Shown here: positions 1,269 through 61,345 of the stretch, in pieces | How the letters are laid out: every line of letters begins with the position of its first letter | Numbering within the stretch: the stretch's first letter is position 1 | From: Salisapilia sapeloensis CBS 127946 | Lineage: Eukaryota; Protista; Oomycota | Reading direction: 5' to 3' | NCBI GenBank assembly: GCA_023334545.1 | Contig: JAADVB010000095.1 | Location: forward strand, 1-62,077 | Length of the DNA stretch: 62,077 bases | Program-made: the position numbers and the translations under genes | The notes under the pieces: generated by a model | Told to the model about the DNA's origin: nothing | The model's database searches: none | The model's input: only the letters and a program-made list of their open reading frames with translations

Positions 1269-3269
1269 ATTTACTCTCACACAATGGAAACTTGTGTTGG
1301 TGTGTGGATCAGTTGGCGAATTGAGGAATGGGAGAAACAAAGCTTTCGACTTTTGGAAAGCTCAAGAGACTGTCATTTACTTCGCAATTTTAAAGAAAAG
1401 GTGGTAACCGCGTGAGTTCAGGGCAGAGAGTGAAATGTAGAAACGAATTCTCTTATGCTTGAAGTGTCCTTAAGCTTTGATGGTTTCATGCAGAAAACCG
1501 AATCGTGATGGAATAACTGCTTGTGATGGATTCATGGCTATACTATGGGCCCAGATAAGCTCTTCATACATGATGCACCCCTTCGGAGTTCTCCAACCGC
1601 CGACGACGTTACAGGCTTTGCTGCATATCAAGTCTAACCTCGTGTGATTGGATCACATAGGACTACCCTTCGACTTTCTGCATGTCGCTTTTATTGAGGT
1701 TTTCTCGCATTTACCTTCCTATGCACATGTCATATAAGTTTGATGAATATATTCTACCAAACAATGGCTGATGGTATCTTAATTATTTTTGCGCAAGCGC
1801 AATGAGGCGACAACGAGATCTTAGGCATTCTAGAATCGCCTTCGTCGCTTATTGTCGAGCTTCTTACGTTCAGCGAGTCATAACTGTGCCATTGAAAGCC
1901 TACGCCAAGAAGCGTTCTTGTTCGATGAGCGAAGAAAGTTGCGAGACTTTCTTAATTTGACTGTGTACACTTGACCGAGAGCACGAGGCAACAAGAGAAT
2001 GCTTGACAAGAAGCGGAAAGACGGAAAAATATTTTCTTCCAGGCAACATTAGTTTCAATTCGCTTCATAGGTCATTCTTCTTCCAGATTTTAGGTCCATA
2101 CCGGCGATTGCGCTCCGAAAAAGATCTTATGGAACAAAAGATCAGCCTATCTAAATGTGTAGACGAACTTTCGATTTTACGAAACCAGATAGCTTAGTTC
2201 GGTTTGTTGTCTCCTCTCTCTACAACATCCTGCAGGTGCTTATTTCTCGATAATTGATTCATCATGGCTTGCATTGATACTAGTTTACACGTGTCAACTT
2301 TAATTTTGCAGGCATAAAAAGCATACTAGACAATCATAAACTCATCTAGTAAAGTCTTCTTCATGCTCAAAGTAGTAAAAAATTGACTTCCATTGCACTT
2401 ATTCGCTTCGTCCATTCTTCCTATCCAGTGTAGCCGCATGCGTAGATGAGTACTACATGTATGTGCGTGTCGAGTTGATCATTCGACTCTATCGTACTAA
2501 ATGACTTTTATAGTTCCTGTGTTTTGTTCTATGTGTACTTTGGAATAGTGATTACTTCGAAGAGCTGAGCTCCTATTGATAGTTGGACACAAGGAATGGA
2601 AGCATACTACTGGCGAGCACCTCGTGTTTGTTGCTGGGAAAGTTCATTTTTATAATGTATGAGAGCTCCCAGGTTTGTTGATAGTGCAAATAAATAAATT
2701 TTTATTTGAACAAATATGCAGTCGCTCGTCAAGATGTGATAGAGATATATATATCGTCTTTGAATGCAGCTAGATGCACAATCTCGCACGACCTGGAAGT
2801 GGAAAGTAATCATGACCGTGATTATTTTGTTATCCTAATTCGATCGGCAGGCTTATGCAAAAGTGAATGCGTCATGCATATACACAAACAAGCTTGACAT
2901 CAAATGGCTAGTCACATGGTCGTACTACTACAGGCGCAGCTTGTCTACAAGCTTTCTTCGCCCACTATTCCGGTCAAGATTCACCTACTCAGATCTGGTA
3001 TGAACTTCAACATTCGATAAGAATTTCTTGATTCGATTCTACTAACAAGTGTACACATTTACATTCGCTTCTTATTTATCCACCTACGCATACCGGCTCT
3101 TCCGTATTGCCTTGACAGCTTCCTTTACAACGATATACAAACATACAGCCCTCTTTATATTCTCGTGAAATCAATAAAGCTCTCATACCTCCAAAACCAA
3201 CTGTCTGTTAAACAGTGTGCTCCAGGGTACTTGAATCGTAATCTGCGGTCGAAAGATCATCGAGATTTT

Positions 3270-37262: not shown

Positions 37263-38525
37263 CTAATTCTTGTTCACCATCTTCGTGGCAACCGCAGCGG
37301 CAATTGCGCCAACGGACAACAACGTCACGGAGCCGACTGCAGCACTAATCATTGCCTCTTTACGCTTCTGATCCTTCTTGAGTCGCTTAGGCTGGCACGT
37401 CTCGAGGTCAATGAGCGACGCGTCATCTTTCAATGGCGTCGCACCAGCACCAACACCAGTGACGATCATCTGCTTGACACCACCAACGATCGGTTCCGGC
37501 ATCCACTCTTCCTTGGCACCGGCGAACCACTTTTGCATTGTAGTGGACGGGAACGTTCGCTTTAAGAAGCCGAAGAACTCGTCCAGCCGATCTTGTTCGA
37601 CGAAGAGAACGGCGTTCGGACCGGCGTCAAACGTGTAAGCAGCAGCGAGGAATCCCTTCTTCTCATTGTACTTGTGCACTAGCGTGACAATGCGGAAGGA
37701 CGTGTCGTTCATGTACCGAATGGGCGGGTACGTATCAAGGCAGCAAGCATGCAGTTGGTTACTCTCTTCCATCGTAATGCGTCCGAACTTTTCAAAGTTC
37801 TTGTTCTTGATTGCATCTTCCATTTGCTTGGTCTTCTCAGGTACGATGTTCTTGGCACGATGACGAAGGAGTTCACTCGTGGCAGTGGACGTCTGCATCC
37901 CGACGGTACTTCCCGTATCCTTCGCACCTTCATGGACGACACATACGATCGCTCGTAGTTCCGGCCAGTGCTTTTGGTCCGCAACTTGGACAGCTACGCT
38001 GTCTTCGCCACCCTCTTCCACACCACTCTGCCACTTGACAAAGCCACCATGGAGACTGCGGCTAGCACTGCCGGAACCACGTCGCGCAGCAATGGACAAT
38101 AGCTGGAGCTTGTGCGCTTCACTCACTGGGTTCGATGGCACGTCCAAGAGCTTGGAGAGAGCAGCGACGAGACAAGCGTAGCCAGAGGCGGAGGACGCGA
38201 GGCCAGCGGCCGTTGGGAAGGAGTTCTCCGACACGATGTGGAGGTGGGCGTGCGAGAGCTTGGGGGAACGCTTGGCGAGCTCAAACAAGAGCGCTCGCAT
38301 GCGTTTCGGGATTGCAACTTCCTCGCCATTGAGCCACAGACGAGTGGACGTGATCCACGGTGCCGTCGCGACACTCGTCGTCGTACGCAGCTCGTTCATG
38401 TCAAGCGTGACGCTCAAAGAGTCATTGATCGGCGTGTTATGCTCGACATCTCGCTTGCCCCAATACTTGATCGTGGCAATGTTCGTGGGCGCTTGGCAGG
38501 TTGCTACTTGGACTCCGTTCTTCAT
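37263..38525 (-). CDS. MVD: Diphosphomevalonate decarboxylase with C-terminal TM extension
   Basis: APTNIATIKYWGKRD, NSFPTAAGLASSASG, ARRGSGSASRS, AYTFDAGPNA. Confidence 0.95.
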   Translation of the reverse strand: MKNGVQVATCQAPTNIATIKYWGKRDVEHNTPINDSLSVTLDMNELRTTTSVATAPWITSTRLWLNGEEVAIPKRMRALLFELAKRSPKLSHAHLHIVSENSFPTAAGLASSASGYACLVAALSKLLDVPSNPVSEAHKLQLLSIAARRGSGSASRSLHGGFVKWQSGVEEGGEDSVAVQVADQKHWPELRAIVCVVHEGAKDTGSTVGMQTSTATSELLRHRAKNIVPEKTKQMEDAIKNKNFEKFGRITMEESNQLHACCLDTYPPIRYMNDTSFRIVTLVHKYNEKKGFLAAAYTFDAGPNAVLFVEQDRLDEFFGFLKRTFPSTTMQKWFAGAKEEWMPEPIVGGVKQMIVTGVGAGATPLKDDASLIDLETCQPKRLKKDQKRKEAMISAAVGSVTLLSVGAIAAAVATKMVNKN

Positions 38526-60333: not shown

Positions 60334-61345
60334 ATGGTAGGCTGTTTGAATGACTCCATCGCTTTGGGCATTGTGTATTAATGATGTGGATGGTCTATAG
60401 CCGGAAAAGAAGGATAGCAATGTCATGCGCGACATCAAGGTCGACAAGCTCGTGATCAACTGTTGTGTTGGTGAATCGGGTGATAAGCTCACTCGTGCCG
60501 CACGTGTGTTGGAGCAGCTCACGGGCCAGAAGCCTGTGTACTCGAAGGGTAAGCTTTTTTTACTTTCGTAAACAAAAGCAAAGAACCGCCCTAACGGGCT
60601 ACTTACCCGGGTCAATCGTCCATTTGCCATGCGACCCCCGTGGCAATGCGATTGGCCTTAACCACTGCCACCGATCCGGGTGCCGGGATCATCTTGTATG
60701 ATTGCGGTAGTCTACTCTTTTCCATTCGAAAGGATAGTCCGTCCCCGATCGCGTGTGATTCAAACGAGTACGATTGACATGTCTTCCGATTATGGAAGCA
60801 CTGTCATGGGGGTTTGAGCACTCTACTCTTTTTATTTCATATACATTCACGTGAGTTGATGTTAAAAAGAGAAGAATCAATTGCAGATGGAGGAGGGCAT
60901 ACATGCCATCCATACAAGTCTTTGTAGCATACTTGAAGACAGAGTGACTGACATTTTATGAACTATAGCTCGCTACACGGTCCGTTCGTTCAGCATCCGT
61001 CGTAACGAAAAGATCTCGTGCCACGTTACCGTCCGTGGTGAACTCGCTTCGGAGATCCTCGAGCGTGGCCTCAAGGTCAAGGAGTACGAGCTCAAGAAGA
61101 AGAACTTCTCGGACACTGGTAACTTCGGTTTCGGTATCCAGGAACACATCGACCTTGGTATGAAGTACGACCCTTCCACCGGTATCTACGGTATGGACTT
61201 CTACGTCGTCCTTACGCGCCCGGGTGCCCGTGTTGCCCGCCGCAAGGCCCGTCAGAACCGTATCGGTGCGTCCCACCGTCTCCACAAGACGGACGCCGTC
61301 AACTGGTTCCAGTCCAAGTTCGAGGGTATCGTCCTTGACAACTAA
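60334..61345 (+). CDS. RPL11: 60S ribosomal protein L11 (uL5); exons 60334-60336, 60401-60548, 60969-61345
   Basis: M|[49 protein letters not shown]|[16 protein letters not shown]...[12 protein letters not shown]...[12 protein letters not shown]. Confidence 0.97.
60583..60820 (+). ncRNA. Unassigned structured RNA element in RPL11 intron 2
   Basis: GC-richer island with several manually found hairpins inside an outlier 420-nt intron; fits no family I recognise. Confidence 0.55.

What the first reader, a model, noticed from the sequence alone, without database searches (positions are those of the whole stretch)
60549..60968. Outlier 420-nt RPL11 intron containing an unassigned structured RNA
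Seen: other introns I resolved are 47-69 nt. This one has AT-rich flanks around a GC-richer core (60583-60820) with manually found stems: GCCC-TAAC-GGGC (60588-60599); a ~19-bp hairpin (60610-60657); GATCC/GGATC (60673-60690) inside ACTGC/GCGGT (60664-68/60704-08); 60712-60737; GATCG/CGATT (60747-60775); GACA.GT.CTTCC-loop-GGAAG.AC.TGTC (60776-60805). G5 at 60808-60812 can pair with CCCC at 60743-46 or with loop GACCCC at 60633-38 (pseudoknot). No C/D boxes, H/ACA layout, Sm site, or TPP/U3/U17/MRP motifs were recognised. Inference: an undescribed intron-hosted ncRNA or cis-regulatory RNA.
Basis: partly seen in the sequence, partly recalled or inferred. Interest (0 to 1): 0.85.

Follow-up and report, generated by a model that had tools for sequence, protein, structure and literature searches.

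The report
Conserved structured RNA in RPL11 intron
The unusually long second intron of the ribosomal protein L11 (uL5) gene carries a folded RNA element that all sampled oomycetes share; it can cover the intron's own 5' splice site, so it most likely regulates splicing of this gene rather than being a free-standing small RNA.

Summary
Positions 60549-60968 are a real 420-nt GT..AG intron of RPL11/uL5, spliced in four RNA runs, and its 5' half is structured (fold z = -4.6; no Rfam, tRNA or repeat match).

The new result is comparative. A long intron (262-972 nt) sits at the same codon in 12 distinct oomycete RPL11 genes, from Phytophthora, Plasmopara, Albugo, Pythium and Lagenidium to Saprolegnia, Achlya and Aphanomyces. 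All share the same sequence blocks and helices:
- **P1:** a small hairpin.
- **c2:** the strand CUUACCC, complementary to the 5' splice site GGGUAAG.
- **P3 and P4:** two hairpin domains with conserved bases and variable tips.

P4 has strong covariation: 95% of cells paired, 10 of 19 pairs with compensatory changes, and a score of 0.44 against 0.16 in shuffles.

I read it as a cis-regulatory splicing element, probably feedback by uL5 or its 5S RNP partners. This is a known kind of control for ribosomal protein genes; I found no description of it for uL5 or oomycetes. No snoRNA boxes are conserved. A 5S rRNA mimic is plausible but untested. Function and binding partner are inferred, not shown.

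Two earlier notes of this scan read the same stretch (s1-312747, s1-312901).

The parts
60401..60548 (+). RPL11/uL5 exon 2 (ends ...VYSK + first base of the next codon)
   Evidence: Translation and tblastn of the spliced protein against orthologous loci. Splice joint in RNA contigs.
60549..60968 (+). Intron 2, 420 nt, GT..AG. If retained, a stop follows after 7 codons.
   Evidence: Joint 60547/8 -> 60968/9 in four RNA runs. Read-through stop computed.
60547..60553 (+). 5' splice-site strand GGGUAAG (5' strand of helix P0)
   Evidence: Forms 7 Watson-Crick pairs with 60602-60608, duplex -11.5 kcal/mol. Pair probability is 0.99 in the window's ensemble and the helix is in its minimum-energy fold.
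60588..60599 (+). P1 mini-hairpin GCCC-UAAC-GGGC, with a branch-point-like loop
   Evidence: Present in all orthologs. The stem varies as GCCU/GGGC, GGCUC/GGGCC, and AGCUC/GGGCU with a GAAA loop in Lagenidium. Pair probability is 0.7-1.0 in 11 of 12 species and 0.12 in Albugo.
60602..60608 (+). c2 'anti-donor' CUUACCC (3' strand of P0), directly followed by P3
   Evidence: Unchanged in 8 of 9 Phytophthora/Pythium/Albugo/Lagenidium-type introns; GUUACCC in L002. In Saprolegniales the same position pairs with an upstream intron segment instead, with compensatory changes.
60609..60658 (+).
   Evidence: The two ends pair in the minimum-energy fold of all 12 species, although the tip is 27-305 nt long. 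Compensatory changes occur in the window, Albugo, Saprolegnia and Plasmopara. Cognate strands pair better than non-cognate ones, permutation p = 0.016.
60659..60667 (+). Single-stranded joiner between P3 and P4 (AAAU-rich in relatives)
   Evidence: Block alignment.
60668..60682 (+). P4 5' strand (block B; relatives have ACGRCCUUUCYGGGUG, the window has CCACCGAUCCGGGUG)
   Evidence: RNAalifold on a plain MAFFT alignment. Fixed-offset pair table. Covariance model and pair counts.
60683..60739 (+). Variable tip of P4 (two window-specific hairpins)
   Evidence: This segment is 2 to 68 nt long in relatives. Albugo has almost none; others have single hairpins with UUCG or GUGA loops.
60740..60757 (+). 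P4 3' strand (block C, contains the invariant CCCCGAYYGCG)
   Evidence: The 11-mer occurs exactly once in each of 15 RPL11 loci, always in this intron on the sense strand. Pairing with block B is shown.
60766..60771 (+). GAGUAC motif, shared with Phytophthora, Plasmopara, Pythium-like relatives
   Evidence: Block alignment. It is absent in Albugo and reads GACAC in Saprolegniales. Its role is unknown.
60776..60805 (+). Local hairpin downstream of the conserved core (window-specific sequence)
   Evidence: Minimum-energy folds. Two substitutions in the 96%-identical relative keep pairs as G-U.
60948..60968 (+). Likely branch point CUGAC (60948-60952) and 3' splice site AG (60967-60968)
   Evidence: Read directly from the sequence. 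Acceptor confirmed by the RNA joint.
60969..61345 (+). RPL11/uL5 exon 3 up to the stop codon
   Evidence: Translation gives a 175-aa uL5. The part encoded by exon 3 is 85-87% identical to oomycete uL5.

Best explanation
The 5' half of RPL11 intron 2 is a conserved cis-acting RNA that controls how efficiently the intron is removed.

Its parts are a small hairpin (P1), a strand (c2, CUUACCC) that pairs with the intron's own 5' splice site (helix P0), and two hairpin domains (P3, P4). P3 and P4 have invariant, irregular bases and freely varying tips.

When P0 forms, the splice site is hidden from U1 snRNA. The c2 strand matches this site with 7 Watson-Crick pairs. By my own base-pair count, assuming the canonical U1 5' end (recalled, not checked for oomycetes), U1 would make 6 plus one G-U.

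An unspliced transcript stops after a few codons and makes no uL5.

I infer that a protein binds the conserved internal loops at the base of P4/P3 and shifts the balance towards or away from P0. The most likely candidate is uL5 itself, or uL5 together with its 5S RNP partner uL18. That would give negative feedback on uL5 synthesis.

Shown: the intron, its splicing, the presence of unspliced transcripts, and the conservation and covariation of the helices.
Inferred: the effect on splicing, the binding protein and the direction of regulation.
For: - **Orthology.** A long intron (262-972 nt) interrupts the same codon in 12 distinct oomycete lineages.
- **Conserved blocks.** Blocks A, B and C are shared while the rest of the intron cannot be aligned. 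CCCCGAYYGCG occurs once per RPL11 locus.
- **P4.** RNAalifold predicted it on an unfitted alignment: 19 pairs, 10 with compensatory change. On the model-fitted alignment, 95% of cells pair and the covariation score is 0.444, against 0.163 in shuffles (0 of 500 reach it) and 0.03-0.09 for slid partners. Fixed-offset pairs show G-C <-> A-U swaps and conserved U.U, U.Y and Y.C mismatches.
- **P3.** It closes in the minimum-energy fold of all 12 species, with compensatory changes.
- **P0.** It is a 7-bp duplex of -11.5 kcal/mol in 7 of 9 peronosporomycete-type sequences (-10.9 and -8.8 in the other two). In Saprolegniales c2 pairs with an upstream segment, with two compensated pairs. P0 probability is 0.78-1.0 in 5 species.
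- **Sense-strand RNA.** G-U pairs occur in P3 and P4, and the fold z-score is stronger on the sense strand.
- **Unspliced transcripts.** An exon-intron-exon contig has 1.4% (X1) and at least 2.2% (X2) of the spliced depth. Retention gives a stop after 2-35 codons in every species.
- **Specificity.** The covariance model hits once per RPL11 locus (E 1e-12 to 1e-21) and nowhere else in 150 kb.
Against: - No experiment or expression contrast links the element to splicing efficiency. Contig depths are coarse, and intron 1 could not be compared.
- P0 has no covariation, because both strands are invariant where it exists. It is not formed with the splice site in Saprolegniales, so splice-site masking cannot be the function shared by all oomycetes.
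- P0 probability is low in the single-sequence folds of Albugo, L002 and Lagenidium.
- The binding protein is unknown. I found no uL5 autoregulation in the papers searched.
- Only 12 lineages were available, and the alignment used is fitted to the model.
- RNAalifold failed to recover P3 from sequence-only alignments.
- The 96%-identical relative shows about 4% divergence across the intron, similar to the upstream non-coding DNA. Recent constraint is therefore not demonstrated.
Confidence: 0.55

Rival explanations
1. The intron hosts a stable, independently acting non-coding RNA of a new class. It would be cut out of the spliced intron and work in trans.
For: The domain is conserved and covarying, with variable tips, as in many stable RNAs. 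Introns of ribosomal protein genes often host small RNAs. The whole intron is present in RNA contigs.
Against: - No C/D, H/ACA, Sm or other processing or protection signals are conserved.
- No Rfam family matches in the window or in 11 orthologous loci.
- The conserved part starts next to the 5' splice site and includes a strand complementary to it.
- The only RNA evidence is an exon-to-exon unspliced contig.
- The 3' border of the element is not conserved.
Confidence: 0.12
2. The element is a constitutive folding aid with no feedback. Its helices compact a long intron or present the splice sites so that it is spliced efficiently.
For: P3 and P4 behave as closing helices over insertions of very different length (27-305 nt and 2-68 nt). 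This is what a distance-shortening stem would do.
Against: - A folding aid does not need invariant 11-16 nt strings and conserved mismatches kept from Saprolegnia to Phytophthora.
- The element lies wholly in the 5' part of the intron and does not bridge to the branch point.
- P0 hides the donor site rather than exposing it.
- It does not explain why the long intron is kept at all in genomes with ~50-90 nt introns.
Confidence: 0.15
3. The region is a neutral long intron, a decayed mobile-element insertion, or a DNA-level element such as an enhancer or a gene on the other strand.
For: The 3' 150 nt are AT-rich and not conserved. Divergence from the close relative is like that of other non-coding DNA.
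Against: - There is one copy per genome locus, at the orthologous position, and no repeats in the window.
- Compensatory changes and G-U pairs point to selection on sense-strand RNA.
- Antisense ORFs called in one locus have no family match.
Confidence: 0.03

Closest known systems
Intronic autoregulatory structures of yeast ribosomal protein genes (RPL30, RPS14B, RPL22B, RPS9). Named from my own knowledge; the review PMC8047918 covers the class.
   Same: A structured RNA in the gene's own pre-mRNA, at or near the 5' splice site. Failure to splice gives a non-productive transcript. The structure is conserved among related species.
   Different: - It is a different protein (uL5) and a different lineage (stramenopiles).
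- The sequence and architecture are unrelated: P1, an anti-donor strand and two expandable hairpin domains.
- Binding by the gene's own protein is not shown here.
- A term search of the 2020 review for uL5/RPL11 returned no passage on autoregulation.
Plant 5S rRNA mimic (P5SM) in TFIIIA pre-mRNA, bound by ribosomal protein L5/uL18 (PMC3378873; PMC12218528)
   Same: - A conserved structured RNA inside a pre-mRNA of the 5S RNP pathway that steers splicing towards or away from a stop-containing product.
- Short strings here resemble 5S rRNA: CCGGGUG, YCCCCGAUC (like the loop C region) and GAGUAC (like loop E).
- The gene product is a 5S rRNA-binding protein.
   Different: - P5SM lies in a cassette exon of TFIIIA; this element lies in an intron of RPL11.
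- P5SM's likeness to 5S rRNA is documented (L2/P2 and P3c/L3 regions). Here the Rfam 5S model gives no hit in 12 introns.
- The order of the 5S-like strings fits only a circularly permuted 5S.
- No oomycete 5S sequence could be obtained for comparison.
U1 snRNA 5' end
   Same: UACUUACCC at 60600-60608 resembles the U1 5' end ACUUACCU (recalled from memory). It pairs with the same splice-site nucleotides.
   Different: It acts in cis inside the intron. There is no U1 body, no Sm site and no Rfam U1 hit. It matches this particular donor (G at -2) better than U1 would.
Intron-encoded box C/D and H/ACA snoRNAs
   Same: A long intron of a ribosomal protein gene holding a structured RNA.
   Different: No conserved boxes and no Rfam snoRNA match in the intron. 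The UGAUGU ... CUGA pair in the 3' part of the window's intron is not conserved, and the CUGA is the likely branch point.

Membership tests
Box C/D or H/ACA snoRNA | Conserved C (RUGAUGA) and D (CUGA) boxes with a terminal stem, or two hairpins with an H box and an ACA 3 nt from the end | tested here: not met
   None of the blocks conserved across 12 species contains such boxes. Rfam gave no snoRNA hit in the intron.
5S rRNA / 5S rRNA mimic (P5SM-like) | Detectable match of sequence and structure to the 5S rRNA model | tested here: not met
   No RF00001 hit even at E <= 10 in the window intron or in 11 orthologous loci.
5S rRNA / 5S rRNA mimic (P5SM-like) | Local copies of 5S protein-binding motifs (helix III/loop C, loop E) in a comparable structural setting | tested here: inconclusive
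   YCCCCGAUC, CCGGGUG and GAGUAC are conserved. The P4 core (CC.GA / UC.GG followed by two pyrimidine-pyrimidine mismatches) resembles helix III as I recall it. The comparison rests on remembered 5S sequences, because no oomycete 5S could be fetched.
5S rRNA / 5S rRNA mimic (P5SM-like) | Specific binding by a 5S rRNA-binding protein (uL18 or uL5) | not testable with these tools
   Needs binding assays.
Autoregulatory intronic element of a ribosomal protein gene | Lies in the gene's own pre-mRNA, close to a splice site | tested here: met
   The core at 60588-60757 starts 40 nt from the donor. The c2 strand pairs with the donor.
Autoregulatory intronic element of a ribosomal protein gene | Structure conserved with covariation among orthologs | tested here: met
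Autoregulatory intronic element of a ribosomal protein gene | A non-productive (unspliced or alternatively spliced) transcript exists | tested here: met
   An exon-intron-exon contig has 1.4-2.2% of the spliced depth in X1 and X2, and is also seen in X6. An early stop follows in all species. Regulation of its level was not tested.
Autoregulatory intronic element of a ribosomal protein gene | Bound by the encoded protein, with dosage-dependent change in splicing | not testable with these tools
   Needs experiments.
U1 snRNA | Full U1 fold with Sm site; match to the Rfam U1 model | tested here: not met
   No hit. Only the 9-nt 5'-end-like string is present.
Transposable element / MITE | Dispersed copies, terminal repeats | tested here: not met
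   No repeat family includes the region. The motif and the model are single-copy in the window and in each locus.

The most novel reading that the evidence does not exclude
The element is a circularly permuted mimic of 5S rRNA built around the splice site. In this reading:
- The 5' splice-site strand and c2 stand in for helix V.
- P3 stands in for a capped helix I.
- The joiner stands in for loop A.
- P4 stands in for the helix II/III-loop C arm.

Free uL5, alone or with uL18, would assemble on its own pre-mRNA as it does on 5S rRNA and lock the donor site away. This would be the first 5S-RNP-sensing splice switch in a ribosomal protein gene, and an ancient trait of all oomycetes.
Probability: 0.2. 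Interest if true: 0.85.

Novelty: new member of a known kind. Interest (0 to 1): 0.62.

Why it matters
- **Reach of a known mechanism.** Feedback control of ribosomal protein genes through structured pre-mRNA is known mainly from yeast, worms and vertebrates. This would extend it to stramenopiles and to uL5, a partner of 5S rRNA for which my searches found no such control.
- **A tractable case.** It offers a deeply conserved eukaryotic cis-regulatory RNA with clear covariation. Such cases are few outside riboswitches.
- **Gene annotation.** Oomycete RPL11 gene models in public databases range from 121 to 253 residues. The long intron is the likely cause, and knowing the element would allow these models to be corrected.
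- **Practical angle.** The element sits in an essential gene of important crop and fish pathogens and was found only in oomycete loci. Lineages outside the oomycetes could not be checked. It could serve as a diagnostic marker or as a handle for studying ribosome homeostasis in these organisms.

Tried and rejected
- **Rfam.** Gathering and permissive thresholds on the window, the intron and 11 orthologous loci gave only chance-level hits.
- **tRNA and repeats.** The tRNA scan and the repeat search found nothing in the region.
- **Metagenome scan.** Scanning for YTAACGGGCNNSTTACCCGRGYC gave two bacterial contigs (L008, L009). They have no RPL11 and none of the other blocks, so they are chance matches.
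- **RNAalifold on the 5' half.** Plain alignments of the 5' half and of P3 alone misalign the strands around the variable tips and recover no P3. P3 therefore rests on per-species folds and on cognate versus non-cognate duplex energies.
- **Helix P2 dropped.** I first drew P2 (ACCC with GGGU of block B). Block B pairs more consistently with block C. The Pythium insidiosum change GGGUG->GGGCG is compensated in block C (CAU->CAG), not in c2. P2 probability is near zero in most ensembles and 0.35 in L002.
- **Partner for the block C 3' flank.** The search gave only inconsistent 4-6 bp matches.
- **snoRNA in the 3' part.** UGAUGU near 60859 and CUGA at 60949 are not conserved, have no terminal stem, and the CUGA is the probable branch point.
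- **Second donor.** GUGAGU at 60853 has no RNA joint.
- **LSU rRNA helix 84 mimic.** I could compare only with sequences recalled from memory, saw no likeness, and did not pursue it.
- **Oomycete 5S rRNA.** Attempts to obtain one failed.
- **Literature.** Searches for a prior description found none.

Full report
**1. The gene and the intron**

The window's 3' end carries an RPL11/uL5 gene.
- The ATG is at 60334-60336, followed at once by a 64-nt intron.
- Exon 2 is 60401-60548.
- The intron in question is 60549-60968.
- Exon 3 is 60969-61345.

The spliced product is a 175-aa uL5. The part encoded by exon 3 is 85-87% identical to Pythium, Phytophthora and unnamed relatives, and about 80% identical to Saprolegnia and Aphanomyces. 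The organism is therefore an oomycete or a very close relative, and its own protein is not in the database.

RNA contigs from four runs contain the joint that skips exactly these 420 nt with GT..AG ends. Two runs are from the same organism. Two are from samples holding a 96%-identical relative.

In the same runs one contig runs from exon 2 through the whole intron into exon 3. Its depth is 336 against 24,663 in X1, and 548 against about 25,000 in X2, so unspliced transcripts are about 1.4-2.2% of spliced ones. These are assembler depths and only rough.

**2. Is the observation more than chance?**

- The sense strand folds to -133.2 kcal/mol against -107.8 +/- 5.6 for shuffles (z = -4.57). The antisense strand gives z = -2.41.
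- Rfam has nothing at gathering thresholds in the whole window. At E <= 10 on the intron it gives only chance-level bacterial and miRNA hits.
- There is no tRNA and no repeat family touching the region.

**3. Relatives**

I looked up oomycete uL5 proteins and fetched their genes. Every one has a long intron at the same place, after ...VYSK and the first base of the next codon.

| Source | Locus | Intron length (nt) |
|---|---|---|
| Window | - | 420 |
| Phytophthora cactorum | L007 | 347 |
| Plasmopara halstedii | L015 | 345 |
| Albugo candida | L012 | 276 |
| Pythium oligandrum | L004 | 551 |
| Pythium insidiosum | L011 | 815 |
| Lagenidium giganteum | L013 | 672 |
| Unnamed Logan assembly | L001 | 972 |
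| Unnamed Logan assembly | L002 | 435 |
| Saprolegnia (two species) | L005, L006 | 390 |
| Achlya | L014 | 354 |
| Aphanomyces | L010 | 262 |

(Lengths.)

Most of each intron cannot be aligned with the others. Three blocks recur in the same order:
- **Block A:** GCCY-UAAC-GGGC, then UACUUACCC, then GGGCCACC.
- **Block B:** GGUGUGCUU, an A/U-rich joiner, then ACGRCCUUUCYGGGUG.
- **Block C:** UUCAUCCCCGAUYGCG(YNCGU).

The branch that includes Phytophthora and Pythium also has UGAGUAC after block C. The 11-mer CCCCGAYYGCG occurs exactly once in each of 15 RPL11 loci, always in this intron on the sense strand, and once in the 62-kb window.

**4. Helices**

*P4.* Block B pairs with block C, and the sequence between them (2-68 nt) forms the tip.
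- RNAalifold found this helix by itself on a plain MAFFT alignment: 19 pairs, 10 with compensatory changes.
- Pairs defined only by fixed offsets from the two invariant anchors show the same picture:
  - One position switches between G-C (5 species) and A-U (7 species).
  - Three more positions have 3-4 pair types each.
  - Three mismatches (Y.C, U.U, U.Y) are conserved.
  - In the window the two U.U/U.Y mismatches have become A-U and G-C.
- In Pythium insidiosum, GGGUG->GGGCG in block B is matched by CAU->CAG in block C.
- A covariance model built from the alignment finds one hit per RPL11 locus (E 1e-12 to 1e-21) and nothing else in 150 kb.
- On the model alignment 95% of cells pair. The covariation score is 0.444 against 0.163 +/- 0.024 for shuffles (0 of 500 reach it) and 0.03-0.09 for partners slid by 1-3 columns. 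That alignment is fitted to the model; the unfitted one search agrees with it.

*P3.* The 3' half of block A pairs with the 5' half of block B.
- In every one of the 12 species, the stretch from the end of c2 to the end of GGUGUGCUU folds so that its two ends pair (7-11 terminal pairs). The interior ranges from 27 to 305 nt.
- The strands differ in a compensated way:

| Species | 5' strand | 3' strand |
|---|---|---|
| Most species | GGGCCACC | GGUG(U)GCUU |
| Window | GGGUCAAUCG | CGAUUGGCCU |
| Albugo | AGACCAC | GUGGUCU |
| Saprolegnia | CCACG | CGUG(U)G |
| Plasmopara | CACU | AGUG |
| Phytophthora | CACC | GGUG |

- Cognate strands pair better than non-cognate ones (mean -11.6 against -10.2 kcal/mol, permutation p = 0.016).
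- Sequence-only alignments could not line these strands up, so RNAalifold missed P3. That is a weakness.

It is kept everywhere. Stem variants include G-C <-> A-U at the outer pair, and Lagenidium has a GAAA loop.

**5. The splice-site link**

The strand between P1 and P3, CUUACCC (60602-60608), is complementary to GGGUAAG, the last two exon bases plus the first five intron bases.
- The 7-bp duplex is worth -11.5 kcal/mol. It exists in all nine sequences of the Phytophthora/Pythium/Albugo/Lagenidium type, at -8.8 in L002 and -10.9 in L004.
- When exon end, P1, P3 and P4 are folded together, the window's minimum-energy structure is exactly P0 + P1 + P3 + P4. The P0 probability is 0.99. It is 0.78-1.0 in four other species, 0.48 in one and low in three.
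- In Saprolegnia, Achlya and Aphanomyces the donor differs (GUAUGU, GUAAGA, GUAUGA) and the corresponding strand does not match it. Instead it pairs with an upstream intron segment, again enclosing P1:
  - GGGGGACC/GGUCCCC in Saprolegnia and Achlya.
  - GAGAAC/GUUCUC in Aphanomyces, with two compensated pairs.
- A helix that encloses P1 is therefore general. Use of the donor itself as one strand is specific to one large branch.
- Retention of the intron gives a stop after 2-35 codons in all species.

**6. Interpretation**

The facts fit a cis-regulatory element that modulates removal of this intron. In most oomycetes it would do so by competing with U1 for the donor site.

The invariant, irregular bases of P3 and P4 look like a protein-binding platform. 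The gene encodes an RNA-binding ribosomal protein, and many such genes are controlled by their own product through pre-mRNA structure. Feedback by uL5 (perhaps with uL18) is therefore the most economical guess. None of this is shown.

I give about 0.9 to "conserved structured cis element", about 0.65 to "it modulates RPL11 splicing" and about 0.4 to "the sensor is uL5 or the 5S RNP proteins". The combined statement gets 0.55.

**7. The 5S rRNA idea**

I see three short conserved strings that recall eukaryotic 5S rRNA as I remember it: CCGGGUG, YCCCCGAUC and GAGUAC. The P4 core also resembles helix III: CC.GA opposite UC.GG, followed by two pyrimidine-pyrimidine mismatches.

The overall topology would match a circularly permuted 5S: a helix enclosing an arm, abutting a capped helix, then a joiner, then a long irregular arm.

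Against this, the Rfam 5S model finds nothing, the similarity rests on remembered sequences, and I could not obtain any oomycete 5S rRNA. I keep it as the novel case at about 0.2.

**8. Comparison with known systems**

- The closest class is the intronic autoregulatory structures of ribosomal protein genes (review PMC8047918). A term search of that review for uL5/RPL11 returned no passage on autoregulation.
- The closest relative within the 5S pathway is the plant 5S rRNA mimic in TFIIIA, which is bound by L5/uL18 (PMC3378873; PMC12218528).
- Searches for a description of this oomycete element found none.
- I therefore class it as a new member of a known kind.

**9. Limits**

- Only 12 lineages could be fetched.
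- No outgroup (Hyphochytrium, ochrophytes) could be examined.
- RNA evidence is from assembled contigs without local depth, so a processed intron fragment cannot be excluded.
- The substitutions seen in the 96% relative are compatible with the structure. Four keep pairs as G-U or G-C, three open terminal pairs, and only one falls in the conserved blocks. They are too few to test it.

Noticed in passing
Protein clusters (oomycete uL5 entries): Public gene models for oomycete RPL11 vary from 121 to 253 residues for a protein of about 175. Examples are 121, 163, 203, 213, 230 and 253 aa. Gene callers also split the gene into two ORFs in Logan and JGI contigs. The long structured intron is the likely cause of these mis-annotations.
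   Followed up: partly
window 60337-60400, and the same place in all loci: A short intron directly after the ATG start codon (ATG|GT...) is also shared by the oomycete RPL11 genes looked at: 64 nt in the window and roughly 75-90 nt in Pythium oligandrum and Saprolegnia.
   Followed up: partly
window 60853-60952: The non-conserved, AT-rich 3' part of the intron holds GUGAGU (a donor-like string, 60853-60858), UGAUGU (60859-60864) and CUGA (60949-60952). There is no RNA joint from the donor-like string. There is no terminal stem or conservation for a C/D snoRNA reading. CUGAC is the probable branch point.
   Followed up: partly
L005 about 3035-3060; L014 (Saprolegnia and Achlya introns, 3' of block C): Saprolegniales carry a second 5S-like string downstream of the core, GGCCCGAUCUGGGCGG. 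It is absent from the other lineages.
   Followed up: no
L012 (Albugo candida) versus window 37263-37390: In Albugo candida, RPL11 lies next to a B12D-family gene and mevalonate diphosphate decarboxylase. This is loose synteny that might help place the organism.
   Followed up: no
L008 516-538 and 14195-14217; L009 3378-3400: The 23-nt block-A pattern matched two bacterial metagenome contigs by chance. L008 carries the match in inverted copies at both contig ends, which looks like an assembly palindrome.
   Followed up: partly
Runs X6 and X7 on window 61004-61221: The runs that hold the 96%-identical relative also contain several other RPL11 exon-3 contigs at 80-90% identity. These samples are therefore mixtures of several eukaryotes.
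   Followed up: no
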